Shown here: one piece after another, positions 1 to 38,979 of the stretch
Layout: each line of letters begins with the position of its first letter
How positions within the stretch are numbered: the first letter of the stretch is position 1
Assembly: GCF_006345805.1 (NCBI RefSeq)
Contig: NC_043022.1
Location: 24,924,001 to 24,988,000, forward strand
DNA length: 64,000 bases
DNA from: Octopus sinensis
Taxonomy: Eukaryota
Direction of reading: 5' to 3'
Made by a program: the position numbers and the translations under genes
Notes under the pieces: model-generated
The model's database searches: none
Told to the model about the DNA's origin: nothing
What the model saw: the letters and a program-made list of their open reading frames with translations, nothing else

Positions 1-1657
1 TAAATTTTGATCTGAGTGCTTGTAGTTAAAATCTGTTACGAATCTATGCCTAAATACTTTGGTGGCTAGCCTTGGACCTAAAAACTCTAATGACCGTATT
101 TATGAAGATTATAGACCCATTTTTGGACTTAGTTTCACTAGAAATGTTTGACCCAGGGGCAATCATGTAAATGTTTATCAAAGATTTTGAAAAATTTCTG
201 ACAATGCCTGTAACATAAAGCCTTAGGTACAGTCACACTGGAGCTTTTAGGCCCGGGTCAATGATCAAATATCTATATAGACAATTTCAAGAGAGAGTTT
301 AGAATCAATCTTTAGAAACCATCTCACTTGAGATCTGGAATGCAAAGTCAATGATCTAAATCATTAGGTACATTTCCTTTTGTGACATTGTGCCTAAGGA
401 CACTACTTTAGATTTTGAGACATAGTCTAACAATTTGAGGAAATCTAACAACAGATTTTAAGTCCCAGGTCAGTGAACTATGTTTTAAACTTAGTTTGAT
501 GATAAATTTTATATTCAAAACCTGCCATGTGAACATTTAGACTCAGTTTCACTTGTGATTTGAGACCAAAGGTCAGAGAACTAAATCTTTAAGCACAGTC
601 TCACAAGACATTTTAGAGACAGGTTCATTGATATAAATCCTTAGAGACTGTTTTAAAAGTAAAATTAGACCGAAGGCCAGTGATCAAAGTCATAAGGCAA
701 TAATCCTACTAAAAATTATAGACCTGCGATCTGTGACCTGTAATTTTTTATATAAGGTATGGAAATTAAATGTCAAGACACATCTGATTTGAGATTTTAC
801 ATCCAGAGCTGGTGATCTACACATTTACAATACTGTCTTTAGAGTTGGAAGGTCAAGGGCCAGTGATGGAAAATTTTTGGACACAATTTCATGGCAGATT
901 TTTATCACAAAGCCTCTCATGGAAATTCATGGGACTGGTTTCAATAATGACCTGTGATCTCTGTAGAGAATCTATACCCAAGGCCACTTGTCTAAATATT
1001 GACACACAGTCTCTCCAGAAATTTTAAACCCAAAATCAGAGACTGTATTAAATATTCTCAGATTCAAAAAGGATGTTAAGACTGTGGTCAAGGATATAAG
1101 TAAGACTAGTGATTTTAAGCCAAAGAGTAGTGATATAAATTTTTAAACATGGCTTTGCTAGTGACTTTAGACCCAATGCCAGTGATCTAAATCTTTAGAC
1201 ATATTCACGAGAGATTTTAGAGCCAAGGTCAGTAATTTAAATCTTAAGCACAGATTAGCTAGAGATTATAGACTCAATGCTAAGAGTCTAAATCTTAGAT
1301 ACTGTGTCTCTAGAAACCAACTACAAAAGCAGTAAAATTAATATCTAGGCAGTGACTCCTTAGAGACTTTAGACACAAGAACAGTAAGCATTAGACCAAT
1401 GCCTGTGATCTGAGAGTTTTGAAAACAAATCAGGACACATTTTCACTAAAGATTTTAGGTCAAAGGCCAGGGATCTAAAGCTTTACATATAGCTTTCCGA
1501 TAGATTTTCAACCCAAGGTCTGTTGCTGAAATGTTTAGACACAGATTCACTACAGATTTTAGATGAAAAGCCAAAGATTTCACACTGAAGGTCAGATTTG
1601 AGAAGGAATGCCAGTGAGTCAAAATCTTCAGAAATTTTAGACTGAAATTTTAGACAT

Positions 1658-2077
1658 TAAGGCAGTGAGCTGGCAGAAACGTTAGCACACCAGATGAAAT
1701 GCTTAGCGGTATTTCGTCTCTGGTCATGTTTTGAGTTCAAAATTCCGCCGAGGTTGACTTTGCCTTTCATCCTTTCTGGGTCGATAAATTAAGTACCAGT
1801 TACGCACTGGGGTCAATGTAATCGACTTCATCTGTTTGTCTGTCCTTGTTTGTCCCCTCTATGTTTAGCCCCTTGTGCGTAGTAAAGAAATAGGTATTTC
1901 GCCTGTCGCTACGTTCTGAGTTCAAATTCCGCCGAGGTCGACTTTGCCTTTAATCCTTTTGGAGTCCATGAATTAAGTACCAGTTACGCTCTGGGGTCGA
2001 TGTAATCGACTTAATCCCTTTGTCTGTCTTTGTTTGTCCCCTCTATGTTTAGCCCCTTGTGGGCAATAAAGAAATAA
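1658..2077 (+). mobile_element. SINE family A, head-to-tail dimer (full copy plus 5'-truncated copy)
   Basis: GAGCTGGCAGAAACGTTAGC...GAGTTCAAATTCCGCCGAGGTCGACTTTGCCTTTCATCC...GCCCCTTGTG..TAAAGAAATA, then a second unit from ~1892. GAAATTTTAGACTGAA at 1631-1646 and 2078-2093 is a likely TSD. Confidence 0.85.
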
Positions 2078-5000
2078 GAAATTTTAGACTGAAGCCAGTG
2101 ATCTCAGCTTCACTAAAGATTTTCTAAAGTTTTTAGACCAAAGGCCAGTGAGCTAAATCTTTTGACACAGTCTCTAGTCAGATTTTAGACCAACTGAAAG
2201 AGATCTAGATCTTTAGAAACAACTTCACAAAAGATTTGGGAATGATGACCAGCGATCTAAATACTTAGACACAGCTTCACTAGAGATTTTTTATAGAAGT
2301 AAAAGGATCTAAATCTTTAGATGCAACATCACTAATAATTTTAGAACCCAAGATGATTAGACTGAATCTTTATATACAGATTACCAAAAGATTTTATACA
2401 GAATGCCAGTGACCGAAATCTGTAGAAAGCGCTTCAATGAAGATATTTGACAGAAGGACAGTGATAGAGCTTCGCTAGAGATTAAAAACAGAAGGCCAGT
2501 GGGATCCAATATATATGATTGGTGAGTTTAGACAACAGATCTGGATACATTTTAGCAAAAAACATTCAGACCGAATGTCAAAAATGCAACATGTTAGATA
2601 TAAGTAGTCTATAGATGATGGATGCAAGATCAGTGATCAAAATAATTGGAAACTGTTTCCACTAGAGATTTACACCCAGTCCCAGTGATATACATATTTG
2701 GATACTGCTTTGCTAGTGATTTAAGATCCAAGGCCAGTGATATAAATCTTAAGCTATACCCTCACAAGACATTTTGGACCCAAAGTCTATGGTCTAAATC
2801 TTTAGACATTGCTTCACTACAGGTATTAGAACAAATCCAGCGATGTAAATATTTAGATCTAGTTCACTAGAAATTTTACACCCAAAGTGAGTGATCTACA
2901 TCTTTAGCTGAATTTTCTCTAAAGATCTTATACTCACAAGCAATGAGTGAATACTGTAGACACTGCTTCACTAAATATTTTAGACCCAGGGTCAGCAATC
3001 TAAATGTGTAGACATTGATTCACTAGAAATTTTTGAACCAAGGGCAGTAATGTCTGCCTTTAGGGACATTATCTCTAGAGATTTTAGGCTCAAGTTCACT
3101 CACAGAAATATTTAGACACAGCTTCACTAGAGAATTTAGACCCAAGGCCAGCAATCTAAATGTTTAGACATAGCTTCACTAGAGATTTTAGACCCAAGGC
3201 CAGTGGTCGAAATGTTTAGATATTGCTTCACGAGGGATTTTAGACCCAAGGCCAGTGGTCTAAATGTTTAAACTTCGCTTCACTACAGATTTTAGACGCA
3301 GGGGAAGCAACCTATATTGTTTAGACATTGATTCACTAGAGATTTTTGAACAAAGGGCAGTAAACTCTGCCTTTAGAGACATTATCTCTACAGATTTTAG
3401 GCTCAAGTCCACTAGAAGAAATCTTAAGACACTGTTTCACTAGAGATTGTAGACCCAAGGCCAGCAATCTAAATGTTTAGACTTTGCTTCACTACAGATT
3501 TTTGAACCAAGGGCAGTAATCTCTGCCATTAGAGACATTATCTCTAGAGATTTTAGACACAAGTTCCCTGATAGAAATCTTTAGACACTGCTTCACTTGA
3601 GATTTTAGACCCAGCACCAGCATTCTAAATGTTTAGACATTGCTTCACTAGAGATTTTAGACCCAAGGCCAGTGGTCGAAATGTTTAGATATTGCTTCAC
3701 TTGCGATTTTAGACTCAAGGCTGGTGCTCTAAATGTTTAGACATTGCTTCACTAGAGATTTTAGACCCAAGGCCAGTGGTCAAAATGTTTAGATATTGCT
3801 TCAGTGCAGATTTTAGTCCCACGGCCAGCAAATCTCTATGTTTAGACATGCTTCACTAGAGATTTTAGACCCAAGGCCAGTGGTCGAAATATTTAGATAT
3901 TGCTTCACTAGAGATTGTAGACCCAAGGCTAGTGGTCGAAATGTTTAGATATTGCTTCACTAGAGATTTTAGACCCAAGGCCAGTGATCGAAATATTTAC
4001 ATATTGCTTCACTAGTGAATTTATACCCAAGTCCAGTTGTCAAAATGTTTAGACATTGCTTCACTAAAGATTTTGGAAGCAAGGTCAGTAATCTCTGCCT
4101 TTAGAGACATTATCTATAGACATTTTAGACACAATTTCACTGATAGAAATCTTTAGACACTGCTTCACTGGAGATTTTAGATCCAGCACCAGCATTCTAA
4201 ATGTTTAGACATTGCTTCAATAGAGATTTTTGACTGAAGGCCAGTGGTCGAAATATTTAGATATTGCTTTACTAGTGATTTTAGACCCAAGGCCAGTGGT
4301 CGAAATGTTTAGACATTGCTTCAATAGAGATTTTTGACTGAAGGCCAGTGGTCGAAATGTTTAGATTTTGTTTCACCAGAGATTTTAGACCCAACGCCAG
4401 TGCTCGGAATGTTTAGATATTGCTTCAATAGATATTTTAGTCCCAGGGCCAGCAATCTAAATGTTTATACATTGCTTCAATAGAGATTTTAGACCCAAGG
4501 CCAGTGGTCGAAAAGTTTAGATATTGCTTCACCAGAGATTTTCGTCCCAGGGCCAGCAAATCTCTATGTTTAGACATGCTTCACTAGTGATTTTAGACCC
4601 AAGGCCAGTGGGCGAAATGTTTAGATATTGCTTCACGAGGGATTTTAGACCCAAGGCCAGTGGTCTAAATGTTTAGACTTCGCTTCACTACAGATTTTAG
4701 ACGCAGGGGAAGAAACCTAAATGTTTAGACATTGATTCACTAGAGATTTTTGAACAAAGGGCAGTAAACTCTGCCTTTAGAGACATTATCTCTACAGATT
4801 TTAGGCTCAAGTCCACTAGAAGAAATCTTAAGACACTGTTTCACTAGAGATTGTAGACCCAAGGCCAGCAATCTAAATGTTTAGACTTTGCTTCACTACA
4901 GATTTTTGAACCAAGGGCAGTAATCTCTGCCATTAGAGACATTATCTCTAGAGATTTTAGACACAAGTTCACTGATAGAAATCTTTAGACACTGCTTCAC

Positions 5001-8000
5001 TTGAGATTTTAGACCCAGCACCAGCATTCTAAATGTTTAGACATTGCTTCACTAGAGATTTTAGACCCAACGCCAGTGGTCGAAATGTTTAGATATTGCT
5101 TCACTTGCGATTTTAGACTCAAGGCTGGTGCTCTAAATGTTTATACATTGCTTCAATAGAGATTTTAGACCCAAGGCCAGTGGTCGAAAAGTTTAGATAT
5201 TGCTTCACCAGAGATTTTCGTCCCAGGGCCAGCAAATCTCTATGTTTAGACATGCTTCACTAGTGATTTTAGACCCAAGGCCAGTGATCGAAATATTTAC
5301 ATATTGCTTCACTAGTGAATTTATACCCAAGTCCAGTTGTCAAAATGTTTAGACATTGCTTCACTAAAGATTTTGGAAGCAAGGACAGTAATCTCTGCCT
5401 TTAGAGATATTATCTATAGGCATTTTAGACACAATTTCACTGATAGAAATCGTTAGACACTGCTTCACTGGAGATTTTAGATCCAGCACCAGCATTCTAA
5501 ATGTTTAGACATTGCTTCAATAGAGATTTTTGACTGAAGGCCAGTGCTCGGAATGTTTAGATATTGCTTCAATAGAGATTTTAGTCCCAGGGCCAGCAAT
5601 CTAAATGTTTATACATTGCTTCACTAGAGATTTTAGACCCAAGGCCAGTGGTCGAAAAGTTTAGATATTGCTTCACCACAGATTTTCGTCCCAGGGCCAG
5701 CAAATCTCTATGTTTAGACATGCTTCACTAGAGTCTTAGACCTAAGGCCAGTGGTCAAAATGTTTATACATTGCTTCACTAGAGATTTTAGACCCAAGGC
5801 CAGTGGTCAAAATGTTTACATATTGCTTCAGTGCAGATTTTAGTCCCAGGGCCAGCAATCTCTATTTTTATACATTGCTTCACTAGTGATTTTAGACCCA
5901 AGGCCAGTGGTCGAAATATTTAGATATTGCTTCACTAGTGAATTTATACCCAACTCCAGTGGTCAACATATTTATATATTGCTTCACTAGAGATTTCAGA
6001 CCCAGGACAGCAATCTAAATGTTTAGCCATTGCTTCACTAGAGATTTTGGAAGCAAGGCCAGTGATCGAAATATTTACATATTGCTTCACTAGTGAATTT
6101 ATACCCAAGTCCAGTTGTCAAAATGTTTAGACATTGCTTCACTAAAGATTTTGGAAGCAAGGTCAGTAATCTCTGCCTTTAGAGACATTATCTATAGAAA
6201 TTTTAGACACAACTTCACTGATAGAAATCTTTAGACACTGCTTCACTGGAGATTTTAGATCCAGCACCAGCATTCTAAATGTTTAGACATTGCTTCAATA
6301 GAGATTTTTGACTGGAAGGCCAGTGGTCTAAATATTTAGATGTTGCTTAACTAGTGATTTTAGACCCAAGGCCAATGGTCTAAATGTTCAGATTCTAGTT
6401 GCAGCGCCAGCAATCTAAATTGTAAATGTTTAGACATTGCTTCACCAGTGATTTTAGACCTAAGGCCAGTGGTCTAAATATTTATGCATTGCTTCACTAG
6501 AGATTTTAGACCCAAGGCCAGTGGTTGAAATGTTTAGATATTGCTTCACTAGGGATTTTAGACCCAAGGCCAATGGTCTAAATGTTTAGATATTGCTTCA
6601 CTACTGATTGTAGTCCAGGGCCAGCAATCTAAATGTTTAGACATTGTTTCACTAAAGATTTCAGACCCAAGGCCAGTGGTCAAAATGTTTAGATATCGGT
6701 TCACTAGTGATTTTAGACCCAAGGCCAATGGTCTAAATGTTTAGATATTGCTTCACTACAGATTTTAGTCCCAGGGCCAGTAATGTAAATGTTTATACAT
6801 TACTTCACTAGTGATTTTTGACCCAAGGCCAGTGGTCAAAATGTTTAGACATTGCTTCACTAGTGATTTTTGACTGAAGGCTGGTGCTCTAAATATTTAT
6901 ACGTTGCTTCACTAGTGATTTTAGACCTAAGGCCAGCGGTCTAAATGTTTAGATATTGCTTCACCAGAGATTTTAGTCCCAGGGCCAGCAATCTAAATGT
7001 TTATACATTGCTTCACTAGAAATTTTAGACCCAAGGCCAGTGGTTGAAATGATTAGATATTGCTTCACCCGTGATTTTAGACCCAAGGCCAATGGTCTAA
7101 ATGTTTAGATATTGCTTCACTACTGATTGTAGTTCAGGGTCAGCAATCTAAATGTTTAGACATTGTTTCATTAGAGATTTTAGACCCAAGGTCAAAATGT
7201 TTAGATATCGGTTCACTAGTGATTTTAGACCCAAGGCCAGTGGTCAAAATGTTTAGATTTTGCTTCACTAATGATTTTAGACCCAAGGCCAGTGGTCAAA
7301 ATGTTTAGACATTGCTTCACTAGTGATTTTTGAACCAAGGCTGGTGATCTAAATATTTAGATATTGCTTCACTAGAGATTTTTGACTGGAAGGCCAGTGG
7401 TCCAAATATTTAGATGTTGCTTAACTAGTGATTTTAGACCCAAGGCCAATGGTCTAAATGTTCAGATTCTAGTTGCATGGCCAGCAATCTAAATTGTAAA
7501 TGTTTAGACATTGCTTCACCAGTGATTTTTTAACCAAGGCTGGTGGTCTAAATGTTTAGATATTACTTCACTAGAGCTTTTAGACCTAAGGCCAACAGTC
7601 TAAATATTTAGATATTGCTTCACTAGAGATTTTAGACCCAAAGCCAGTGGTCAAAATGTTTAGATATTGCTTCACTAGAGATTTTAGTCGCACACTGCTT
7701 CATTAGTGATTTTAGACCCAAGGCTGGTGGTCTAAATGTTTATACATTGCTTCACCAGAGATTTTAGTCCCAGGGCCAGCAATCTAAATGTTTAGACATT
7801 GCTTCACTAGAGATTTTAGACCCAAAGCCAGTGGTTGAAATGTTTAGATATTGCTTCACTACAGATTTTAGTCGCACATTGCTTCACTAGTGATTTTAGA
7901 CCCAAGGCTAGTGGTCTAAATGTTTAGATATTGCTTCACTAGTGATTTTAGACCCAAGACCAGTGGTCTAAATGTTTAGATATTGCTTCACTAGAGATTT

Positions 8001-9877
8001 TAGACCCAAGGCCAGTGGTCAAAATGTTTAGATATTGCTTCACTACAGATTTTAGTCGCAGGGCCAGCAATCTAAATGTTCATACATTGCTTCACTAGTG
8101 ATTTTAGACCCAAGGCCAGTGGTCTAAATGTTTACATATTGCTTCACTGCAGATTTTAGTCCCAGGGCCAGTAATGTAAATGTTTAGACATTGCTTCACT
8201 AGAGATTTTTGACCCAAGGCCAGTGGTCGAAGTGTTTAGATATTGCTTCACTCGTGATTTTAGGCCCAAGGCCAGTGGTCTAAATGTTTATATATGGATT
8301 CACTAGAGATTGTAGACCCAAGGCCAGCAACCTAAATGTTTAGACTTTGCTTCACTAGAGATTTTTGAACCAAGAGCAGTAATCTCTGCCTTTAGAGGCA
8401 TTATCTCTAGAGATTTTAGACACAAGTTCACTAGAAGAAATCTTTAGACATGGCTTCACTTGAGATTTTAGACCTAAGGCCAATGGTCTAAATTTTTAGA
8501 CATTGCTTCACTAGAGATTTTTTAACCAAGGGCAGTAATCTCTGCCTTTAGACACATTATCTCTAGAAATTTTAGACACAAGTTCACTAATAGAAATCTT
8601 TAGACACTGCTTCACTAGAGATTTTAGACCCAAGGCCAATGGTCTAAATTTTTAGATATTTCTTCACGAGAGATTTTATTCCTAGGACCAGCAATCTAAA
8701 TGTTTAGACATCACTTCACTAGAGTTTTTTTAACCAAGGGCAGTAATCTCTGCCTTTAGAGACATTATCTCTAGAGATTTTAGGCTCAAGTCCACTGATA
8801 GAAATCTTCAGTCACTGCTTCACTAGAGATTTTAGATCCAAGGCCTGTTGTCTAAATCTTAAATACATCTTTGCTAGAGGTTTTTTTCTAAAGCCGATGA
8901 TCTAAATCTTTAGAAACTACTTCTCAAGATATTTTAGAACCGAGGCCAGATATACACATTTTAGACACAGCTTCATGGGATGTTTTGGTTACAAGGCCAG
9001 TGACAAAATTCTCTAGACTCAGCTTCACTGGTGACTTTAGACCTAAGGCCACTGATAGAAATCGTTAGATACATGTTCAATGGACACTTTAGACCCCAGG
9101 CCAGCGATCAAAATTAATAGATACACCTTCACTACAAATTTTAGTCTCAGGACCAATGAGCTGAACCTTTAGGTGCATCTTCACAAGGCCAGTGATATGA
9201 TTTCTTTAGACACTACTTTGCTAGTGATTTTAGACCCAAGGCCAGTGATCTAAATATTTAGATGTGTCTTCATTAGATACTTAACACCCAAAGCCAGTGA
9301 TATAGATCTTTAGATACTGCTTTATATGCGATTTTAAACCCAAGGCCAAGTATAAAAATTTTTAGACACAGCTTCACAAGAGATTTTAGGCACAAAGCCA
9401 GTTATCTAAATCATTAGAGGCTTCTTCAGTACACATTTTGGACACAAGGACAGAGATCTAAATCTTTAGGCACAGCTTCACTTATGATTTTAAACTCAAG
9501 GTCATTGATATAAATCTTTAGATGTACCTTCACAAGAAAGTTTAAACCCAAGATCAGTAATATAAACTTTTAGACACAACTTCAATAAAGATTTTACACC
9601 CAAGGAAAGTGATCTATATTTTTGGTGATAGTTTCACTAAAGACTGTAGTCCCAGAGTCAGTTCTATACATCTTTAGATACATGCTTGCTAGATATTTTA
9701 GACCCAAGGCCAGTGGTCTAAATCATTTGACAATACTGCACTAGAGATTTTAGACCCATGACCAGTAATCTGAATGTTTAGAACCAACTTCACTAGACAT
9801 TTTGGACCAAAGGTCAGTAATCTAAATCTTTACACACTGCTTCTGTAGAGATTTTAGACTGAAGACCAGTTATTTAA

Positions 9878-10098
9878 CCTTTTCATTACCAACCCAGCTG
9901 AAACCAGCTCTGGCTCTGTAGTAGAAATGTCTTGTTTTCATAAGTTTTGAATTAAAGTCTCCCACCAAACCTTAGTCACAATTTATGTTCCTAACACTAG
10001 CTTAATGATAACTAAATTATTATACTAAATTCTTTGTTGTATTTAAAGTAATTGAAAGAAGCACAGAACATCGCGAAATAAATACAGTAATGAAAGGG
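9878..10098. mobile_element. piggyBac-like MITE
   Basis: TTAA on both sides (9874-9877, 10099-10102). Terminal inverted repeats CCTTTTCATTAC / GTAATGAAAGGG match 11/12. Confidence 0.8.
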
Positions 10099-10207
10099 TT
10101 AAATCCATTGACACAACTTCACCAGAGACTTTGGAAACAAAGCCAGTCATTTGAATTTTTAGACACAGTTTACTAGAGGTTTTAGGCCCAAAGTAGATGA
10201 CTTATAC

Positions 10208-10613
10208 CTTTACTCTTTTACTCTTTTACTCTTTTATTTGTTTCAGTCATTTGACTGCAGCCATGCTGGAGCACCGCCTTTAGTTGAACAAATCGACCCA
10301 GAGACTTATTGTTTGTAAGCCTAGTACTTATTCTATCGGTCTCTTTTGCTGAACCGCTAAGTGACGGGGACATAAACACACCAGCATCGGTTGTCAGGCG
10401 ATGTTGGGGGACACACAGACACACAAACATATACACACACATACATATACATATATACGACGGGCTTCTTTCAGTTTCCGTCTACCAAATCTACTCACAA
10501 GGCATTGGTCGGCCTGATGCTATAGTAGAAGACACTTGCTCAAGGTGCCACGCAGTGGGACTGAACCCGGAACCATGTGGTTGGTAAGCAAGCTACTTAC
10601 CACACAGCCACTC
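10208..10613 (-). mobile_element. SINE family B (tRNA-like head, internal CA/TA microsatellite, (AGTAAAAG)n tail), full length
   Basis: Matches the copies at 43151, 45349, 48708 and 51853: GTGGCTGTGTGGTAAG...GGTTCAGTCCCACTGCGTGGCACCTTG...GCTCCAGCATGG..GCAGTCAAATGACTGAAAC. Confidence 0.9.
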
Positions 10614-13600: not shown

Positions 13601-13648
13601 TACTTGATATTTTAAACCCAAGGCCAGCAATTTAAGTCTTTACACACC

Positions 13649-13692
13649 AGTGTCTTCTACTATAGCCTCAGGTCGACCAAAGCCTTGTGAGT
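13649..13692 (+). mobile_element. 44-bp internal fragment of SINE B inside the satellite
   Basis: AGTGTCTTCTACTATAGCCTCAGGTCGACCAAAGCCTTGTGAGT matches the SINE B body. Confidence 0.75.
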
Positions 13693-23740: not shown

Positions 23741-23791
23741 GTATATATATATATATATACATACATACATCTATATATATATACATACATC

Positions 23792-23850
<59 letters not shown>

Positions 23851-24182: not shown

Positions 24183-24213
<31 letters not shown>
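23741..24213. repeat. (TA)n and (CA)n microsatellites flanking a short reverse satellite remnant
   Basis: TA tract 23741-23892, CA/TA tract ~23980-24213. Confidence 0.9.
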
Positions 24214-24214
<1 letters not shown>

Positions 24215-24469: not shown

Positions 24470-24667
24470 CAGTGGATTTCAACCAGGGTTCCGCGGAACC
24501 TTAGGGTTCTGCCAGTACAGTCCAGGGGTTCTGCAAGAAGTTACAAAACTGCTAAAATCGGCAGTAAATTTTAATTCTCCTGTGCAGATATGTGTGCATA
24601 AGATTATTAAATTATTGCACAGGGTTTTCTTGGGGTTCCGCTCCAGCAAAAAGTTTGAAAAGCACTG
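24470..24667. mobile_element. hAT-family MITE (198 bp)
   Basis: TIRs CAGTGGATTTCAAC / GTTTGAAAAGCACTG. Perfect 8-bp TSD ATTTAGAC (24462-24469, 24668-24675). Confidence 0.85.
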
Positions 24668-27600: not shown

Positions 27601-30600
27601 GATTTTAGACCAAAGGCCAGCGGTCTAAATCTTTAGACACAGTTTCACTAAAGATTTTATACCTAAGACCAGCGACCTAGAGATTTAGACATTGTTTCAA
27701 TTAATATTTTAGACCAAAGGCCAGCTATCCAATTCTTTAGAAACAGCTTTAATAGAGATTTAGACACAAGGCCAGGAAACTAAACCTTTAAACACAGTTT
27801 TGATAAAGATTCTAGACGCAAGCCCAGTGATCTAAATCTTAAGACACAGTTTCAAAAATTTTAGACGAAAGGCAAGAGGTCTAAATCTTTAGACTCAGTA
27901 TCACTAAGGATTTTAGACCCAAGGCCAGCGATCTGAATCTTTAGAGAGTGTCACTAAAGATTTTAGATTTAAGGCTAGTGATCTAATTCTTTAGACACAA
28001 TATCAATAAAGATTTTAGTCCCAAGGCCAGGGATCTAAGTCTCTAGACAACATTTTATTAAAGATTTTAGACGCAAGACCAGAGATTTAAATCGTTAGAC
28101 ATAGACTGAATAAAGAATGTAGGCCGAATGTCAGCGGTCTGAATCTTTTGACTCAATATCAATAGATTTTAGCCCCAGGCCAGCGATCTGAATTTTTAGG
28201 CATAGTGTCATTAAAGATTTTAGATCCATGGCTAGTGAGCTAAACCTTTGGTCATAGATTCGATGAAGATTTTAGCTCCAAGGCTAATGAAGAAAGAGAT
28301 TCGCGAAAGATCTTAAACCGGAGAGCAGTGATCTTTAGAGAGATTCAATAAAAATTTCAGACAAAAGGCCAGTGATCTAAATCTTTAGACAGTTTTAATA
28401 AAAATTTAGACCGATGGCCAGTGATCTAAATCTTTAGTGACATTTTCAACAAAGATTTTAGATCCAAGGCCAGTGAGAGAAATCATTAGACACAATTTCA
28501 ATAAAAAATTTATAGCCAAGGCTAGTGATCAAAATCTTTAGATACAGTTTTCACAGGGCTTTCAAAACCAAGGCAAGGGATCTGAATCTTTAGACACAGT
28601 TTCAATAAAGAGTTTAGACCCAAAGCCAATGATCTAAATCTTTGGACACAGTTTCAATAAGAATTTTAGACTGAAGGTCAGCGACCTAAATCTTTAGACA
28701 CAGCTTCAATAAAGATTTTAGACCTGAGGCCAACTGGCTAAATCTTTAAACACAGTTTCAATCAAGATTTTACAGTGAAGGCCAGCGATCTGAATCTTTG
28801 GACAGTAATTCACTAAGGATTTTAGAACAAATGCCAGTGACCTAATCTTTAGACACTATTTTAATAAATATTTTAGCCAAGACCAGCAATCTAAGTCTTT
28901 AGACACAGACTTAGTAAAGAGTTTAGACTGGAGGTCACCGATTTGAATCGTTGGACAGTTTCACTAAAGATTTTAGATCTAAAACCAATGATCAATATGT
29001 TTAGACAGTTTCAATAAAGATTTTAGATCCAAGGTCAGTGATCTAAATCTTTAGACAGAGTTAAACTATAGACCTTAGATGCAATGTCAGTGATTTAACT
29101 CTTTAGACACAGATTCACTAAGGATTTTAGCCCCAAGGCCAGGCATCTAAATGTTTAGACACAGTTTCAATAAAGATTTTAGAACGAAGGCCAGCGATCT
29201 AAATCTTTGGACACAGTGTCACAAACAATTTTAGACCGAAGGCCAGTAATAGAAATCTTTAGACATGGTTTCAATAATGACTTTATATCAAAAGGCAGCG
29301 ATCAAAATCTTTATGCACAGCTTCAGTTAGGATTTTAGAGCCAGGAAAGTGATTTAAATCCTAAGACACAGTTTCAATAAAGATTTTAGACCAAAAGCCA
29401 GAGATGTAAATCTTCAGACACAGTTTCACTAAGGATTTTTGGTTCAAGGCCAGTGATCTAAGTCTTTAAGCACTGGGTTACTAAAGACATTAGACTTAAG
29501 GCGAGCGATCTAAATCTTTAGACATAGTTTCAATAAAGATTTTAGATCAAAGGCCAGCGATCGAAATCTTTAGACACAGTTTCTATAAAGATTTTAGACC
29601 CAAGGCCAGTGATTGAAATCTTTAGACACAGGGTCACTAAAGATTTTAGACCAAAAGCCAGTGATGTAAGTCCTTAGACAAAGTTTCAATAAAGATTTTA
29701 GATCAAAGGCCAGTGATCAAAATCTTTATCCACAATTTCAATAAAGATTTTAAACCAAGGCCAACGATCTAAAACTTTAGCCACGGTTTCTATAAATCTT
29801 TACACGCAGGGTCACTAATAATTTTAGACCAAAAAGCAATGAAATAAATATTTAGATATAATTTCAATAAAGATTTTCGACTGGAGGTCCGGTGATCTTA
29901 ATATTTAGACAGTTTCTGTAGGGATTTCAGACCCAAGGCCAGAGATGCAGATCTTTACATTAAGTTACAATAAGGATTTTAGACCAAAAGCCAGTGTCTA
30001 AATCTTTAAGCACTGGGTTACTAAAGACATTAGACTTAAGGCGAGTGATCTAAATCTTTAGACATAGTTTCAATAAAGATTTTAGACTCAAGGCCAGCAA
30101 TCGAAATCTTTAGATACAGTTTCTATAAAGATTTTAGACCCAAGGCCAGTGAACAAAATCTTTAGACACAGGGTCACTAAAGATTTTAGACCAAAAGCCA
30201 GTGATGTAAGTCTTTCGACATAGTTTCAGTAAAAATTTTCGACCGAATGCCAAGTGATCTCAATATTTAGACACAGTTACAGTAAGGATTTTAACCCAAG
30301 GCCAGTGATGTAATTCTTTACATAATGCTACAATAAGGATTTCAGAACAAAGCCAGTTATCTAATCATTAAACACAGTTCCAAGTAATATTTTAGACTGA
30401 ATACCAGCGATATGAATGTTGAGACACAGTTTCACCGCATATTTTCGACCATAGGCCCAATAATCTATATCTTTAGAAACAGCCTAAAATTTTAGTCTGA
30501 AGCCCTGTGATCAAAATCTTTAGACACAGATTCAGTGAAGATTTTTAGACTCAAGGCCAGGTATGTAAATCTTGAGAAACAATTTCAATAAAGATTTTCG

Positions 30601-30612
30601 ACCATAGGTCCA

Positions 30613-31460
30613 GTGATCTAAATCTTTAGACACAGGATCTAATAAGATTTTAGATCGAAGGACCGTGATCTAAATCTTTAGACACAGGATCTAATAGGAT
30701 TTTAGATCGAAGGACAGTGATCTAAATCTTTAGACACAGTATCTAATAGGATTTTAGATCGAAGGACAGTGATCTAAATCTTTAGACACAGGATCTAATA
30801 AGATTTTAGATCAAAGGACAGTGATCTAAATCTTTAGACACAGGATCTAATAAGATTTTAGATCGAAGGACAGTGATCTAAATCTTTAGACACAGGATCT
30901 AATAAGATTTTAGATCGAAGGACAGTGATCTAAATCTTTAGACACAGGATCTAATAAGATTTTAGATCGAAGGACAGTGATCTAAATCTTTAGACACAGG
31001 ATCTAATAAGATTTTAGATCGAAAGACAGTGATCTATATCTTTAGACACAGGATCTAATAAGATTTTAGATCGAAGGACAGTGATCTAAATCTTTAGACA
31101 CAGGATCTAATAGGATTTTAGATCGAAGGACAGTGATCTAAATCTTTAGACACAGGATCTAATAAGATTAAAGATCGAAGGACAGTGATCTAAATCTTTA
31201 GACACAGGATCTAATAAGATTTTAGATCGAAGGACAGTGATCTAACTCTTTAGACACAGGATCTAATAGGATTTTAGATCGAAGGACAGTGATCTAAATC
31301 TTTAGACACAGGATCTAATAAGATTTTAGATCAAAGGACAGTGATCTAAATCTTTAGACACAGGATCTAATAAGATTTTAGATCGAAGGACAGTGATCTA
31401 AATCTTTAGACACAGGATCTAATAAGATTTTAGATCGAAAGACAGTGATCTAAATCTTTC
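30613..31460 (+). repeat. ~16 near-identical copies of a 52-bp satellite variant
   Basis: GTGATCTAAATCTTTAGACACAGGATCTAATAAGATTTTAGATCGAAGGACA repeated with 0-2 differences per copy. Confidence 0.95.
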
Positions 31461-31827
31461 GATACATTTTAAATAAAGATTTTAGAACAAGTCTAGTAAA
31501 GAGTTTAGTTTGGAGGTCCCTGATTTGAATCTTTGGACAGTTTCACAAAGCAGTTTAGACCCAAAAGCAGCGAACTAAATGTTTAGACACAGGTTGAATA
31601 TAGATTTTAGACGGAAGGCCAGTGATCTGAATCTTTGGACATAGTTTCGCGAAGCAATTTAGCCTAAAGGCCGGAGGTCTAAATCTTTGGAGATAGTTTC
31701 AATACAGATTTTAAACTGAAGGCCAGTGATCTAAATCTTTAAAGCCATTTTCAATAATGATTTTAGACCGAAGACCAGGGAACAAAATGTTTAGACACAG
31801 TTTCAATAAAGATTTGAGACCCATGAA

Positions 31828-31955
31828 AAGTAGTGTGCATACCAACCACATGGTTCTGGGTTCAGTCCCACTGTGTGACACCTTGAGCAAGTGTCTTCTA
31901 CTATAGCCTCGGGCCGACCAAAGCCTTGTGAGTGGATTTGGTAGACGGAAACTGA
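31828..31955 (+). mobile_element. SINE B internal fragment inside the satellite
   Basis: CCAACCACATGGTTCTGGGTTCAGTCCC...GGATTTGGTAGACGGAAACTGA. Confidence 0.85.
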
Positions 31956-34900
31956 TTCTTTAGATGCAGTTTCACTAAGGATTTAAATCCGCCGTCAGCA
32001 ATCTAAATCTTTAAACAGAGTTACACAATAGACCTTAGGCACAAAGTCATTGATTTAAGTCTTTAGACACTGTTTCACCAAGGATTTTAGACCCAAGGCC
32101 AGTGATCTAAATATTTAGACACGGTATCAAAAAAGATTTTAGAACGAAGGCCAGTGATCTAAATCTTTGGACGCAGTGTCACTAAAGATTTTAGACTGAA
32201 GGTGAGCGATCTAAATCTTTAGTCAGTTTCAACAAAGATTTTAGACCCAAGGCCAGTGATCTAAATCTTTAGACTCAGGGTTACTAAGAATTTTAGGCTG
32301 AAGGCCAGCGATTTAAATCTTTAGATACAGTTCCAATAAAGATTTTAGACCGAACGCCAGTAATATAAATCTTTAGACATTGTTTTAATAATGATTTTAG
32401 ATGAAAAGCTAGTGATCAAAATCTTTAGACAAAGTGTGGATTTTACACCTAAGGCAAGCATTATAAATCGTTAGAAAAAGTTTCACTAACAATTTTAGAG
32501 TGAATGTCAGTGATCTAGCTCTTTAAACACAGATTCAGTAAGGATTTTAGACCCAGGGCCAGTGTTATCTAAATCTTTAGAAACAGTTTCAACAAAAATT
32601 TTACACCCAACGCCAGTGTTCTAAACCTTTATTCAGAGTTTCAATAAAGATTTTAGACCAAAGGCCAGCGATCAAAATCTCTAGATACTGTTTAAATAAA
32701 GATTTTAGACCAAAGGCTGGCGATCTGAAACTTTAGATATAGTTTCAATAAAGATCTTAGACTAAAAGCCAGCGATCTAAATCTTGAGACACATTTTCAC
32801 TAAGAATTTTCGCTCAAGGGCAGTGATCTAACACTTTAGACACTGGGTTATTAAAGATATTAGACTTAAGGTGAGCGATCTAAATCTTTATCCACAATTT
32901 CAATAAAGATTTTAGACACGAGGCCAGTGATCTAAATCTTTAAACACTGTTTCAAAAAAGCTTTTAGACAGAAGGCCAGTAATCCAAATCTTCAGACATA
33001 GTTTCAATAAGTATCTTAGACCAAAAGTCAGTAATCAAGATATTTAGACACAGTGACAGCAAGGATTTTAGACCCAAGAAAGTGATCTAAATCGGAAGAC
33101 ACATTTTCAATAAAGATATTAAGGCAAGTGATATAAATCTTTAGGCACAGTTTCAAATTAGCTTTTAGACCAAAGTTCTGTGGTCTAAATCTTTAGATAA
33201 AGTGTCACTATTGATTCCAGACCCAAGGCAAGCAATCTAAATCTTTAGAAACTGTTTCACTAACGATTTTAGACCAAGGGTCAGTGATCTGAATCATAAG
33301 ACACCGTTTCAATAAAGATTTCAAACTGAAGGCCAGCGATCAAAATCTGTAGACACTGTTTTTTCAAAAAAGATTTTAGACCAAACGCTAGTGGTCTAAA
33401 TCTTTAGACAAAGTGTCACTATTGATTTCAGATCCAAGGCAAGCAATCTAAATCTTTAGAAACTGTTTCACTAACGATTTTAGACCAAGGGTCAGTGATC
33501 TGAATCTTAAGACACCATTTCAATAAAGATTTCAAACTGAAGGCCAGCGATCAAAATCTGTAGTCACTGTTTTTTCAAAAAAGATTTTAGACCAAACGCT
33601 AGTAGTCTAAATCTTTATACACAGTCTCACCAAGGATTTTAGACCCAAGGCAAGTCATCTTAACTTTTAGAAAAATTTTCACTAAAGATTTTAGACCCAA
33701 GGCCAGCGATCTAAATCTTTGGACACAGATTTAATAAAGACTTTCAACCAAAAGCCAGTCATCTGAATATTTAGACACAGTTTCAATAAAGATTTTAGAC
33801 CCAAGGCCAGAGACCTAAATCTTTATCCACAGTTTCAAAGGAGATCTTAGACTGATGGAGAGCAATGTAAATCTTTAGACACAGCTTCACTAAATATTGT
33901 AGACTGGAAGCTAGTGATCAAAATCTGTAGACAAAGTATCACTAAGGATTTTAGACCCAAAGGAAGAAATTTCAATCCTCAGAAATAGTTTCAGTAAAGA
34001 TTTTAGACCCAACACCAGCAACATAAATCTTTAGACACATTTTCAGTAAGGACTTCTGCCCCAAAGCCATTGATCTAAATCTTTAAACACAGTCTCGACA
34101 AAGATTTTACACCGAAAGCCACTGATATAAATCTTTATCCACAGATTCAATAAAGATTTTAAACTGAAGGCCAGTGATCTAAATCTTTAGACACAATTTT
34201 TTAAATAAGACTTTTGACCGAAGGCCAGTGGTCTAAATCTTTAGACAAAGTGTCGCTAAGGATCCTAGAGACAATACATGTCGTCTAAATCTTTAGACAC
34301 ATTTTCAATAAAGACTTACGACAGCGATCCAAATTTTCAGACACAGTTTCGCTCACGATTTTAAACCTAAGGCCAGTGATCTAAATCTTTAGACACAGGG
34401 TTGCAAAAGCTTTTGGACTGAAGGCAAGTGATTTAAATCATAAGACAAGGTTTCACTGAAGATTTTATCCCTAAATCCAGTGATCTAAATCTTCAGACAC
34501 AGTTTCACTCACGATTTTAGACCCTAGGCCAGTGATCTAAATCTTTAGATACAGTTTCAATAAAGATTTTCGTCTCAAGGCCAGCAATCTAAATTGTTAG
34601 ACACAGTTTCAATAAAAATTTTAGAATAATGGCCAGCGATCATAAATCTTTAGACAAAGTTTCAGTAAGGATATTAGATCCCAGAACGTGATCTAAATCT
34701 TTATCCACAGTTTCAATAAAGATTTTAAACTGAAGGCCAGTGATCAAATCATTTACACAAATTTTTTAAAAAAGATTTTAGACCGAAGGCCGGTGGTATA
34801 AATCTTTAGACAAAGTGTCAGTAAGGATTTTAGATCCAGGGTTAGTAATCCAACACTTTAGGCACAGATTCAGTTAGGATTTTAGACTCAAAGCCAGTGA

Positions 34901-37900
34901 CTTAAATGTTTGTGCATAGTTTCAATAAAGATTTTACACCTAGGGCCAGTGATCTAAATCTTTACACATAGTCTCACTAAAGATTTTATGCTTAAAAGGA
35001 AGCAGTCCAAATCTTTACAAACAGTTTCGCTAAAATTTTTTGACCCAAGGCCAGCAACTTAAATCTTTTGACACATTTACAGTAAGGATTTTAACCCGAA
35101 GGCCAGTGATCGAAATCTTCATACAGCTTTGACAGAGGTTTTACACCGAAAGGCAGCGATCTAGATCTTTATCTACAGTTTCAATAAAAGATTTTAGACC
35201 GAAGGCCAGTGATCTAAATCTATAATTGCTGTTTAAATAAAGATTTTAGACCGAAAGCTGTGATCTAATTCTATATGCAGAGATTCAATATAGATTTTAG
35301 ACCAAAGGCCAGCAATCTAAATCATTAAACACAGTTTCAATAAAGATCTCAAACCAAAGGCCAGTAATCTAAATCTTTAGACATAGTTTCTATAATGATT
35401 TTACCCCAAAAGCCAGCTATGTATATCTTTAGACACAGTTTCAGTAAGAAGTTTAGATCCAAGCAAGTGATGTAAATCTTAAGATACAGTTTCAATGAAG
35501 ATTTTAGACCCAAGGCCAGTCAGCTTAATCTTTATCCACAGTTTCAAAAGAGATCTTCGACTGATGGACAGCGATGTAAATCTTTTAGACACAGCTTCAT
35601 TAAATATTTTAGACCGAAGGCCAGTAATCAAAATCTGTAGACAAAGTCTAACTAAGGATTTTAGACCCAAAGGAAGAAAATTCAATCTTCAGAAACAGCT
35701 TCACTAACGATTTTAGACTCAATGCCAGCAACTTAAGTCTTTAGATACATTTTCAGTAAAGACTTTAGCCCCAAGGCCATTGATCTAAATCTTTAAACAC
35801 AGTTTCAACAAAGATTTTACACCGAAACCCAGTGATCTAAATCGTTATCTACAGATTCAATAAAGATTTTGAACTGAAGGCCAGTGATCTAAATCTTTAG
35901 ACACAATTTTAAAAATAAGACTTTTGACCGAAGGCCAGTGGTCTAAATTTTAGACAAAGTGTCACTAAGGATCCTAGAGACAATACACATCATCTAAATC
36001 TTTAAAAAGTGTGCCACTCAAGATTTTGCACCCAGGGTCAGTTATCCAACTCATTAGAGACAGATTCAGTAAGGGTTTTAGACATAAAGCCAGCAACCTA
36101 AATCTTTAGTTACAGATTTAGTAAGGCTTTTAGACCCAAGAAAATGGTCAATCTGTTAAGGCACAGTTTCACATAATATTTTAGACCGAAGGCCAGTGAT
36201 ATAAATCTTTAAACAAAATCTCACTAAGGATTTTAGACCCAAAGGAAGAAATGTAAATCTTTAAACATATTTTCAGTAAGGATTTTGGCCCCTAGGCCAG
36301 TGATCTAAATCTTTAGTTACAGATTTAGTAAGGCTTTTAGACCCAAGAAAATGGTCAATGTGTTAAGGCACAGTTTCACATAAGATTTTAGACCGAAGGC
36401 CAGTGATCTAAATCTTTAAACAAAATCTCACTAAGGATTTTAGACCCAAAGGAAGAAATGTAAATCTTTAAACACATTTTCAGTAAGTATTTTGGCCCCT
36501 AGGCCAGTGATCTAAATCTTTAGACACAGTTTCAATAAAGACTTACGACAGCAATCTAAATTTTCAGACACAGTTTCGCTCACGATTTTAGACCAGTGAT
36601 CTAAATCTTTAGACACAGGGTTGCAAAAGCTTTTGGACTGAAGGCAAGTGATTTAAATCATAAGACAAAGTTTCACTAAAGATTTTAGTCATAAATCCAG
36701 TAATCTAAATCTTCAGACACAGTTTCACTCACGATTTTAGACCCTAGGCCAGCGATCTATATCGTTAGACACAGTTTCAATAAAAATTTTAGAATGATGG
36801 CTAGCAATCATAAATCTTTAGACAAAGTTTCAGTAAGGATGTTAGATCCCAGAATGTGATCTAAATCTTAAGAAAAAGTTTCAATAAAGATTTTAAACTG
36901 AAGGCCAGTGATCAAATCATTTAGACAAATTTTTTTAAAAAAGATTTTAGACCGAAGACCAGTGGTATAAATCTTTAGACAAAGTATCAGTGAGGATTTT
37001 AGACCCAGGGTTAGTAATCCAACACTTTAGGCACAGATTCAGTAAGGATTTTAGACCCAAAGCCAGTGACTTAAATGTTTGTGCATAGTTTCAATAAAGA
37101 TTTTACACCGAGGGCCAGGGATCTAAATTTTTACACAAAGTCTCACTAAAGATTTATAGACTTAAAAGGAAGCAGTCCAAATCTTTACAAACAGTTTCGC
37201 TAAAATTTTTTGACCCAAGGCCAGCAACTTAAATTTTTGATACATTTACAGTAAGGATTTTAACCCGAAGGCTAGTGATCAAAATCTTTATACAGCTTTG
37301 ACAAAGGTTTTACACGAAAAGCAGTGATCTAGATCTTTATCTACAGTTTCAATAAAGATTTTAGACTCAAGGCCAGCGATCTAAATCTATAATTGCCGTT
37401 TAAATAAAGATTTTAGACCGAAAGCCGGTGATCTAAATCTATATGCAGAGATTCAATAAAGCTTTTAGAGCCAAGGCCAGCGATCTAAATCATAGTTTCA
37501 ATGAAGATTTTAACCTGATGGCCGGTGGTTTAAATATTTAGACAAAATTTTATGAAGGACTTTAGACTTTAGAAACAGTGTCACTTAAGATTTTAAACCC
37601 GGGGTCAGTGGTTCAACTCTTTAGACACAGATTCAGTTAGGATTTTAGATCCAAAGCCCATGACATAAATCTTTAGACACAGTTTTAGTAAGGGGTTTAG
37701 GCCCAAGAAAGTGAGTTAAATCTTTAGACACAGTTTCAAGAAAGATTTTAGACTCAAGGCCGGTGATCTAAATCTTTATCCACAATTTCGAATTACATCT
37801 TAGACTGAAGGCCAGTGATCTAAATCGTTAGACACAGCTGCACTAAATATTTTAGACCGAAGGCCAGTGATTTAAATCTTTATTCATAGTTTCAAATGAG

Positions 37901-38979
37901 ATCTTTGACTGATGACTAGCGATCTAAATCTTTAGATACAACTTCACTATAATTTTTAGACCGAAGAGCAACGATCTAAATCTTTAGGACAAAGTATCAC
38001 TCAGAATTTGAGGCACAAAGGAAGCAATCTAGATCTTTAGACACATTTTCAGTAATGATTTTAGACCCTAGGTCAGTGATCTAAATCTTTAGACACAGTT
38101 TCAACAAAAATTTTACACCAAAAGCCAGTGATCTAAATCGTTACCCTCAGATTCAATAAAGATTTTAGACCGAAGGCCACTGCTCTAGATCTTTATACAC
38201 ATTTTCAATAAAGACTTACGACAGCAATCTAAATCTTCAGGCACAGTTTCACTCACGATTTTAGACCCTAGGCCAGTGATCTAAATCTTTAGACACAGGG
38301 TTGCAAAAGCTTTTGGACTGAATGCGAATGATTTATATCATGACAGTTTCACTAAAGATTTTAGCCCTAAATCTAGTGATCTAAATCGTTAGACACAGTT
38401 TCAGTAAAGATTTTAGAATTAAGGCCAGCGATCTAAATCTTTAGATACAGTTTCAATAAAGATTTTCATCTCATGGCCAGCGATCTAAATCGTTAGATAC
38501 AGTTTCAGTAAAAATTTTAGAATGATGCCCAGCGATCTAAATATTTAAAGTGCTTTGGTTGTATTTATTACATGAGGCATGTGATCGAAGCATTTAGACA
38601 CTGTTTCACAAGAGTTGAAGTATTAAGACACTCTCTCAAAGATCGTAAGTTTATTAATCTAAATATTTATAAATAAAGTTTGAATTTGGCTTCCAAAATT
38701 CTTGACTTCCAAGATTCTTCTCGTTCGTTGAAACAAATCTTGTTGTATCTTGGGAGGGTCATTACACCAATAAAAATTTGAGTAAACACAAGCACTGGTT
38801 CAATAGCAGATCTATATTTTACCAACTAACTATTCGATGGCTTGTTTAATGTGTTGAGTGAACAATCAACTGATTGTTAGATTTTCTCTATCAGAGTCCT
38901 TTCATTGCTATTCGCCACCTCATCAATGAGATACCCTCTCATCCTTCAGGGTCTGCTTTGAGTCTCTCTGAGTAATATA

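What the first reader, a model, noticed from the sequence alone, without database searches (positions are those of the whole stretch)
1..38545. Large 52-bp satellite built from paired dyads, with a five-helical-turn period
Seen: roughly 550-600 monomers (estimated as length/52). Each has TTTAGAC twice (spacings 28 and 24) and two imperfect palindromes, TCTAAA-TC-TTTAGA and CTAAA-GAT-TTTAG, which are near reverse complements of each other. These motifs persist while the spacers diverge. Established: 52 bp is ~5 turns at 10.4 bp per turn, and three monomers (156 bp) equal the monomer size of maize CentC and are close to rice CentO. Inference: a phased array of dimeric-protein binding or cruciform sites, a candidate centromeric/pericentromeric satellite that may be undescribed.
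Basis: partly seen in the sequence, partly recalled or inferred. Interest (0 to 1): 0.7.

Follow-up and report, generated by a model that had tools for sequence, protein, structure and literature searches.

The report
Old decaying 52-bp octopus satellite array

Summary
The 52-bp satellite is real. TRF finds arrays of up to 119 copies. A profile search finds 514 plus-strand and 18 inverted monomer hits. They cover 24.3 kb, or 63%, of 1-38545.

The array is not one uniform block:
- It has two cleaner cores, A (2957-9877) and B (27404-38547).
- Degenerate monomers flank both cores.
- A segment at 16044-19884 is inverted.
- A 4.4-kb transposon and microsatellite cluster, plus several SINE-like insertions, interrupt it.

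Monomers are only 72-77% identical to each other. Identity does not depend on distance, so there is no higher-order repeat and no 156-bp unit.

The motifs belong to the consensus, not to each monomer:
- Only 37 of 337 monomers carry TTTAGAC twice.
- The two dyads are perfect in 69 and 13 of 337 monomers. Independent columns predict 72 and 17.
- No monomer has both dyads intact.
- The apparent persistence of the motifs comes from GC-to-AT mutation bias. A/T columns inside the dyads are no better conserved than A/T columns outside.
- The monomer has no 10.4-bp harmonic.

Best reading: an old burst-amplified satellite in an Octopus-lineage genome that is now decaying neutrally. I found no description of it in the searched literature. 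A centromeric role could not be tested here. Interest is low.

The parts
1..1656 (+). Degenerate 52-bp monomers. The array is cut by the left edge of the window.
   Evidence: nhmmer hits. Mean pairwise identity is about 0.65.
1657..2076 (+). SINE-like element (family A) inserted in the array, with a partial 184-bp tandem duplication
   Evidence: TRF period 184 at 1728-2076. Other copies at 38976-39203, 51242-51478, 59537-59766 and 62674-62892 are 85-91% identical.
2077..2956 (+). Degenerate 52-bp monomers
2957..9877 (+). Core block A. Subfamily consensus: TTGCTTCACTAGAGATTTTAGACCCAAGGCCAGTGATCTAAATGTTTAGACA. Contains a local 184-bp unit (3 monomers plus a 28-bp half unit) x3 at 7508-8060, 89% identical.
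   Evidence: TRF 2957-9114 at 118.9 copies and 9184-9877. Consensus. Within-block identity 0.76.
9873..10104 (.). Dispersed-repeat fragment interrupting the array
   Evidence: 91.8% identical to O. vulgaris L001:4327-4558. Gap in satellite hits at 9878-10109.
10215..10640 (.). Dispersed element of about 400 bp (family B) inserted in the array
   Evidence: Copies at 43141-43546, 45348-45747, 48708-49103 and 51854-52251 are 80-92% identical. Also present in O. vulgaris L001.
10674..16004 (+). Degenerate plus-strand monomers (block C1)
   Evidence: nhmmer. Pairwise identity about 0.65.
16044..19884 (-). Inverted segment. About 22 contiguous minus-strand monomers lie at 16044-17200. Scattered minus-strand monomers continue to 19884. 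Interruptions are about 1 kb of unclassified sequence (17.2-18.2 kb) and dispersed element D (19126-19526).
   Evidence: nhmmer minus-strand hits. Junction sequence read. Element D copies at 55514-55921 and 63508-63901.
19879..24322 (.). Non-satellite cluster: LINE C-terminal-like ORF 19879-20229(-); family B fragment 20260-20448; SINE-like family C at 20569-20768 and 21887-22143; (TA)n 21068-21890; LINE reverse-transcriptase fragment 22326-23744(-); (TA)n/(CA)n 23742-24214
   Evidence: (Pfam RVT_1, E = 3.6e-16)
24323..27403 (+). Degenerate plus-strand monomers (block B0)
   Evidence: identity about 0.67
27404..38547 (+). Core block B. Subfamily consensus: CAGTTTCAATAAAGATTTTAGACCGAAGGCCAGTGATCTAAATCTTTAGACA. 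Contains a family B transposon fragment at 31828-31955 and a 207-bp x2.1 local duplication (97%) at 36098-36523.
   Evidence: TRF. Consensus. Identity 0.72-0.73. Transposon fragment.
38548..38615 (+). Decayed terminal monomers at the right edge of the array
38976..40179 (.). SINE-like A (38976-39203, minus), microsatellites and SINE-like C (39922-40179). These separate the array from its last remnants.
40188..40400 (+). Last decayed satellite monomers beyond the transposon insertions
   Evidence: nhmmer hits at 40189-40282. Sequence read.

Best explanation
This is a non-coding satellite DNA array with a 52-bp monomer in the genome of an octopus (Octopodidae, Octopus-like; species not determined).

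Inferred history: the array grew by the usual tandem-repeat mechanisms of unequal exchange, slippage and segmental amplification. Two variant monomers were each amplified in a burst, giving blocks A and B inside an older and more degenerate array. Since then the copies have diverged independently under a GC-to-AT-biased mutation process.

Shown directly: the array has been broken up by at least nine insertions of dispersed elements (SINE-like families and a LINE fragment) and by one orientation switch of about 3.8 kb.

The TTTAGAC direct repeats and the two 5-6-bp palindromes were features of the founder monomer. They look persistent because they are almost entirely A/T. They are not maintained by selection. 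The sequence shows no evidence of a motif-specific function. Any role would be a bulk one, such as heterochromatin. Chromosomal position is unknown.
For: - Tandem 52-bp structure.
- Octopus origin: the LINE ORF has its best named matches in Octopus vulgaris (92%) and O. bimaculoides (86%). A 21-kb O. vulgaris locus shares at least five dispersed-repeat families with the window at 75-94% identity.
- Non-coding: no Rfam or tRNA matches. Only short ORFs lie in the array. Satellite-derived ORFs have no relatives among 5.8 billion proteins.
- Age and absence of homogenisation: monomers are about 80% identical to the consensus. Pairwise identity is 0.72-0.77 in the cores and 0.65 in the flanks. Identity is flat with distance: lag 1 is 0.752 against 0.751 for pairs more than 1.5 kb apart in block A, and 0.737 against 0.717 in block B2.
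- Subfamily structure: identity between blocks A and B is 0.68, with diagnostic consensus differences.
- Transposon insertions: the families also occur in the flank, and their copies are 85-93% identical. They are therefore less diverged than the monomers. At 31.8 kb the monomer is interrupted at model position 36 and resumes near position 40.
- No selection on the motifs: perfect dyads 69 and 13 of 337 against 72.4+-4.7 and 16.7+-2.8 expected; pairing fraction 0.754 against 0.757 and 0.594 against 0.595.
- A/T columns are better conserved than G/C columns (p = 0.004 to 2e-6). C>T and G>A are the commonest changes. A/T columns in the dyads are no better conserved than A/T columns elsewhere.
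- No conserved box after correcting for base composition.
Against: - The window shows only one locus, and the array is cut at the left edge. A homogeneous, functional core of the same family could lie just outside.
- Per-column conservation is correlated between blocks (Spearman 0.46-0.66). This fits a shared mutational bias but would also fit a weak shared constraint.
- Short dyads are 2.4-4 times more frequent than in dinucleotide shuffles. The consensus dimer folds far better than shuffles (z = -6.2). The founder sequence was therefore genuinely dyad-rich.
- The age estimate assumes neutral rates that have not been measured for octopus.
Confidence: 0.8

Rival explanations
1. The monomer is a phased pair of binding sites for a dimeric protein, or a pair of cruciform-forming sites, spaced five helical turns apart. 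The array is a functional centromeric satellite.
For: The consensus carries two palindromes and two TTTAGAC copies. Dyads with 5-6-bp arms are 2.4-4 times enriched over shuffles. The consensus dimer folds with z = -6.2. GATTTTAGA and TTTAGA are the best conserved words in raw terms, at 0.82-0.95.
Against: Intact dyads are a minority, 20% and 4%, and never both in one monomer. Their frequency matches the independent-column expectation. Conservation is explained by A/T content. There is no 10.4-bp harmonic. Real sequence folds with z of only -1.7 to -2.0. Arms of 8 bp or more are almost absent. There is no higher-order repeat and monomer identity is about 75%. The array holds many transposon insertions.
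Confidence: 0.06
2. It is the old, diverged outer layer of a pericentromeric or other heterochromatic satellite domain. The young homogeneous core lies outside the window. Any function comes from bulk heterochromatin rather than from the motifs.
For: The layered structure, with cleaner cores flanked by degenerate monomers, transposon accumulation and an orientation switch, resembles the flanks of satellite-based centromeres in other animals (established knowledge). The array continues past the left edge of the window. The right flank (40.5-64 kb) has no recognisable genes and is full of microsatellites and SINE-like elements.
Against: Nothing in the window shows chromosomal position. The same structure is expected for any old interstitial array. 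No homogeneous core was seen.
Confidence: 0.25
3. The array derives from a transposable element, by expansion of the internal or subterminal tandem repeats of a mobile element. This is common for mollusc satellites.
For: Each half unit begins with TTTAG and ends with CTAAA, which resembles short terminal inverted repeats (read from the consensus). Oyster satellites are frequently associated with transposons (PMC8268682, listed; abstract only read).
Against: No monomer-like sequence was found in any dispersed element of the window or in the O. vulgaris sample locus. Outside the array and its immediate remnants there are no isolated copies in 23.5 kb of flank. Apart from TTTAGAC and CTAA, the two half units are not significantly similar (p = 0.59).
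Confidence: 0.08

Closest known systems
Diverged monomeric satellite layers flanking homogenised centromere cores (for example human monomeric alpha satellite)
   Same: Head-to-tail array. Monomers about 70-80% identical with no higher-order repeat. Subfamily blocks, transposon insertions and orientation switches.
   Different: The monomer is 52 bp, not 171 bp. The sequence is unrelated and the organism is a cephalopod. No adjacent homogeneous core was seen. Location is unknown.
Maize CentC (156 bp) and rice CentO (155 bp)
   Same: Only the arithmetic 3 x 52 = 156.
   Different: There is no 156-bp unit here. Ungapped identity falls steadily from 52 to 104 to 156 bp, and identity by monomer lag is flat. 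The host is an octopus, not a grass. Sequence similarity was not tested.
Dyad-rich (non-B DNA) centromeric satellites, as proposed by Kasinathan and Henikoff 2018 (cited from memory, not read here)
   Same: The consensus carries short dyad symmetries, enriched 2.4-4 times over shuffles.
   Different: The dyads are intact in only 20% and 4% of monomers. Pairing is not maintained. Real sequence folds only marginally better than shuffles. Centromere association is unknown.
Scattered, transposon-associated satellites of the Pacific oyster (PMC8268682)
   Same: Mollusc satellite DNA in a transposon-rich genome.
   Different: This is one long array of more than 38 kb. It was invaded by transposons after it formed, rather than being short arrays carried inside mobile elements. 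No monomer was found inside a transposon.
CENP-B-box type satellites, where a conserved protein-binding box sits in otherwise diverging monomers
   Different: No window of 7-11 columns is conserved beyond expectation after correcting for base composition (p = 0.17-0.57).

Membership tests
Satellite DNA (long non-coding tandem array) | Head-to-tail copies of one monomer over kilobases | tested here: met
   TRF arrays of up to 119 copies. 532 profile hits, with 337 of 515 spacings exactly 52 bp.
Satellite DNA (long non-coding tandem array) | Non-coding | tested here: met
   No Rfam or tRNA hits. Only short ORFs lie in the array, and they have no protein relatives.
Satellite DNA (long non-coding tandem array) | High copy number across the genome | not testable with these tools
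   No octopus genome can be searched by DNA here. There are no copies in 21 kb of O. vulgaris, in 23.5 kb of flank, or in JGI metagenomes apart from one chance match.
Functional centromeric satellite | Bound by CenH3/CENP-A at the primary constriction | not testable with these tools
   Needs ChIP or CUT&Tag and FISH.
Functional centromeric satellite | Recently homogenised array, often with higher-order repeats, and few transposons in the core | tested here: not met
   Pairwise identity is 0.72-0.77 and flat with distance. At least nine dispersed-element insertions lie in the interval. This applies only to the part of the array inside the window.
Dyad-symmetric, cruciform-prone satellite | Short dyads more frequent than in composition-matched sequence | tested here: met
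   2.4-4 times enrichment for 5-6-bp arms in blocks A and B.
Dyad-symmetric, cruciform-prone satellite | Dyads maintained across copies (pairing preserved, compensating changes) | tested here: not met
   Perfect dyads 69 and 13 of 337 against 72.4 and 16.7 expected. Pairing fraction equals the null. Only 9 and 20 double-change cells.
Dyad-symmetric, cruciform-prone satellite | Actual sequence folds clearly better than shuffles | tested here: inconclusive
   z = -1.7 and -2.0 for two 312-nt segments, with 6 and 4 of 100 shuffles as good. The consensus alone gives z = -6.2.
CentC/CentO-like unit of 155-156 bp | A repeat unit of about 156 bp | tested here: not met
   No peak at a lag of three monomers beyond the 52-bp series.
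Helically phased (curved DNA) satellite | A/T tracts in phase with about 10.4 bp | tested here: not met
   The power of harmonic 5 is no higher than in shuffled monomers; 45-72% of shuffles reach it. The dominant harmonic is 26 bp.
Transposon-derived satellite | Monomer present inside a mobile element | tested here: inconclusive
   None was found in the dispersed elements of the window or in L001, but the sample is small.

The most novel reading that the evidence does not exclude
The 52-mer is a lineage-specific octopod centromere-associated or pericentromeric satellite. Its TTTAGAC-containing core would be recognised by a sequence-specific protein, for example one of the greatly expanded octopus C2H2 zinc-finger proteins. 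The window would then show only the decayed outer layer of a much larger homogeneous domain. It would be the first cephalopod centromere repeat to be described.
Probability: 0.06. Interest if true: 0.6.

Novelty: new member of a known kind. Interest (0 to 1): 0.2.

Why it matters
I found no satellite DNA described for cephalopods in the searched literature. A catalogued 52-bp family would therefore be a modest and useful addition for annotating repeats in octopus genomes, and a possible marker for heterochromatin or centromere mapping. The wider lesson is methodological. In an AT-rich genome with GC-to-AT mutation bias, A/T-rich consensus motifs in an old satellite will look conserved without any selection. 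Conservation claims need to be corrected for base composition.

Tried and rejected
1. I searched 5.8 billion proteins with a concatenation of satellite-derived ORFs, hoping to find other arrays through spurious gene calls. No hit reached E<=1.
2. Two exact 20-mer scans of JGI metagenome contigs gave zero matches and one single non-tandem chance match.
3. Literature searches by sequence strings and by octopus/cephalopod satellite terms found no relevant paper.
4. I fetched an O. vulgaris locus through a LINE protein. It confirmed shared transposon families but contained no satellite. A short ENA contig was uninformative.
5. I tested whether the monomer is a dimer of an ancestral unit of about 26 bp. 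Beyond TTTAGAC and CTAA the halves are not similar (p = 0.59), so I rejected this as unsupported.
6. I tested for a 156-bp or other higher-order repeat and rejected it. Only two small local duplications exist: 184 bp x3 at 89% and 207 bp x2.1 at 97%.
7. A self-BLAST for long high-identity duplications within the array found nothing beyond the SINE duplication.
8. I looked for genes in the right flank to place the locus on a chromosome. Only low-complexity ORFs are present.
9. The Rfam and tRNA scans were empty.
10. CpG observed/expected was computed. It is not informative because the consensus itself has almost no CpG.


Full report
**What is there**

Tandem Repeats Finder reports a 52-bp repeat over most of 1-38547. 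The main arrays are 2957-9114 (118.9 copies, 71% matches), 27404-29790 (46.7 copies), 29793-31486 (32.7 copies, 81%) and 32001-37491 (106.2 copies, 68%). I built a profile from the consensus and searched it with nhmmer. It finds 514 plus-strand hits and 18 non-overlapping minus-strand hits at E<=0.01 inside the interval. These cover 24.3 kb, or 63%. Of 515 neighbouring start-to-start distances, 337 are exactly 52 bp. The existence, period and right boundary of the satellite are therefore confirmed.

**Architecture**

The interval is not one uniform array.
- Plus-strand monomers run from the left edge of the window to 16004. The array is cut by the window.
- Block A (2957-9877) is a relatively clean core. 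Degenerate stretches lie at 1-2956 and 10674-16004.
- At 16005-16044 the orientation switches. About 22 contiguous minus-strand monomers follow, to about 17200. Scattered minus-strand monomers continue to 19884.
- 19.9-24.3 kb holds no satellite. It contains LINE fragments, one with a Pfam RVT_1 match at E = 3.6e-16. It also contains two copies of a SINE-like element, a fragment of another dispersed element, an 823-bp (TA)n tract and further microsatellites.
- Plus-strand monomers resume at 24323. They are degenerate to 27403 and then form core block B at 27404-38547.
- After two SINE-like insertions and microsatellites, a few decayed monomers remain at 40188-40400.
- Further dispersed elements interrupt the array at 1657-2076, 9873-10104, 10215-10640 and 31828-31955. 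Each has other copies in the right flank at 80-93% identity.
- At 31.8 kb the interrupted monomer stops at model position 36 and resumes near position 40. This fits insertion into an existing array.

**Organism**

The window is eukaryotic, with abundant microsatellites and no tRNA or Rfam matches. The LINE ORF at 22485-23150(-) has its best named matches in Octopus vulgaris (92% over a third of the query) and O. bimaculoides (86%). A 21-kb O. vulgaris locus fetched through that protein shares at least five dispersed-repeat families with the window at 75-94% identity. That is the same range as copies within the window show to each other. The source is therefore an Octopus-lineage genome. The species was not determined.

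**Divergence and lack of homogenisation**

- Monomers are about 80% identical to the consensus.
- Pairwise identity is 0.76 within block A, 0.72-0.73 within block B, about 0.65 in the degenerate parts and 0.68 between blocks A and B.
- Identity does not depend on distance. In block A, neighbours give 0.752 and pairs more than 1.5 kb apart give 0.751. In block B2 the values are 0.737 and 0.717.
- This star-like pattern indicates burst amplification of two variant monomers followed by independent decay, with no ongoing homogenisation. This is inference.
- There is no higher-order repeat. Ungapped identity falls steadily from 52 to 104 to 156 bp. Identity by monomer lag shows no consistent three-monomer signal.
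- Only two small recent duplications exist: 184 bp x3 at 89% (7508-8060) and 207 bp x2.1 at 97% (36098-36523).
- The inserted dispersed elements are less diverged from their relatives than the monomers are from each other. The amplification therefore predates them (inference).

**The motifs**

TTTAGAC occurs twice at spacings 28 and 24. TCTAAA-TC-TTTAGA and CTAAA-GAT-TTTAG are present, and they are near reverse complements of each other.

In the actual monomers I used 337 ungapped copies.
- 37 carry TTTAGAC twice, 170 once and 130 not at all.
- Dyad 1 is perfect in 69 and dyad 2 in 13. None has both.
- Shuffling the right arms among monomers, which keeps column composition, predicts 72.4+-4.7 and 16.7+-2.8 perfect dyads.
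- Pairing fractions are 0.754 observed against 0.757 expected for dyad 1, and 0.594 against 0.595 for dyad 2. Nothing holds the arms complementary.
- The left arm of dyad 2 is the least conserved block of the monomer (0.65). It differs between the subfamilies: CTAGA in block A and ATAAA in block B.

**Why the motifs look conserved**

Dyad arms have a mean major-base frequency of 0.824 against 0.762 for the rest, but 9 of 52 circular shifts do as well. Consensus A/T columns are better conserved than G/C columns in every block: 0.865 against 0.785, 0.848 against 0.771, and 0.829 against 0.660 (p = 0.004, 0.005 and 2e-6). C>T and G>A are the most frequent changes.

Within A/T columns, those in dyad arms are no better conserved than those outside (p = 0.22-0.35), and in block B they are lower. 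After removing the base-class effect, no window of 7, 9 or 11 columns is conserved beyond permutation (p = 0.17-0.57). The impression that the motifs persist while the spacers diverge comes from an AT-rich motif sitting next to a GC-rich spacer (CCCAAGGCCAGTG) under GC-to-AT-biased decay.

**Structure-forming potential and helical phasing**

- The idealised consensus dimer folds far better than shuffles (-19.1 kcal/mol, z = -6.2).
- Real 312-nt segments of blocks B and A give z = -1.7 and -2.0, with 6 and 4 of 100 shuffles as good.
- Dyads with 5-6-bp arms are 2.4-4 times enriched over dinucleotide shuffles in the cores. Arms of 8 bp or more are essentially absent.
- The 10.4-bp harmonic of A/T, WW or AA/TT content in the monomer is no higher than in shuffled monomers. 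The strongest harmonic is 26 bp, which reflects the two TTTAGA copies.
- Beyond TTTAGAC and CTAA the two half units are not significantly similar (p = 0.59).
- The equality 52 = 5 x 10.4 and the match 3 x 52 = 156 with CentC have no counterpart in the sequence.

**What it most likely is**

It is an old, burst-amplified satellite array that is now decaying neutrally in an octopus genome. It has been invaded by dispersed elements and partly inverted. Its motifs are a legacy of the founder monomer.

Shown here: tandem structure, subfamilies, divergence, insertions, the orientation switch, and the lack of motif maintenance.

Inferred: the order of events, the age (large, given about 0.15 substitutions per site per copy, but the octopus neutral rate is unknown), and the absence of sequence-specific function.

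Not testable here: genome-wide distribution, chromosomal position and chromatin state. An old pericentromeric or other heterochromatic location remains possible. An active homogenised centromere core is not what this window shows.

**Comparison with known satellites and novelty**

It behaves like the diverged monomeric layers of satellite domains known from many animals. It is not related to CentC or CentO in any way that was tested. It fails the maintenance test for a dyad-based or box-based functional satellite. I found no description of this sequence, or of any octopus satellite, in the searched literature. It is best filed as a new member of a known kind. Interest is low.

No step in this work touched anything that needed referral.

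Noticed in passing
window 57042-57540: A very homogeneous 28-bp minisatellite (GTTGTCAAGGACAAACACAAAGATACCT), 17.8 copies at 98% identity. It is much younger than the 52-bp array and unrelated to it.
   Followed up: no
window 21068-21890, 59769-60663, 58199-58600, 54305-54644: Unusually long microsatellites: (TA)n of 823 bp, (ACC)n of about 900 bp, (CAT)n-rich tracts of about 400 bp and (TATG)n of 340 bp. The whole right flank (40.5-64 kb) is microsatellite-rich and has no recognisable gene.
   Followed up: partly
window 1657-2076; 38976-39203; 51242-51478; 59537-59766; 62674-62892: A SINE-like element of about 230 bp (begins GGCAGTGAGCTGGCAGAAACGTTAGCAC...) in at least five copies at 85-91% identity. 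It is also present in O. vulgaris L001. The copy at 1657-2076 carries a 184-bp internal tandem duplication.
   Followed up: partly
window 10215-10640; 43141-43546; 45348-45747; 48708-49103; 51854-52251 (fragments at 20260-20448, 31828-31955, 40817-40998): A dispersed element of about 400 bp in at least five full and several partial copies (80-92%). It is often followed by AT-rich microsatellites and is shared with O. vulgaris. It was not classified.
   Followed up: partly
window 16005-16044: A head-to-head junction where the satellite switches from plus to minus orientation. The inverted part belongs to a more diverged variant. I could not tell whether this is a true inversion or an assembly join.
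   Followed up: partly
window 27404-38547 (block B), consensus column CCGAAGG: The block B consensus has a CpG where block A has CCCAAGG. It is the least conserved column of block B, with a major-base frequency of about 0.35. Variant consensus units in TRF read CCAAAGG and CTGAAGG. This would fit CpG decay and possibly methylation of the array.
   Followed up: no
window 17200-18216: About 1 kb inside the inverted satellite segment with no satellite hits, no Pfam match and no other copy in the window or in L001. It remains unclassified.
   Followed up: partly
L002 (ENA ERZ22665968 contig k127_13032110): A short metagenome-assembly contig encodes a LINE fragment 88% identical to the window's copy. 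This suggests octopus host DNA in that ENA sample.
   Followed up: no
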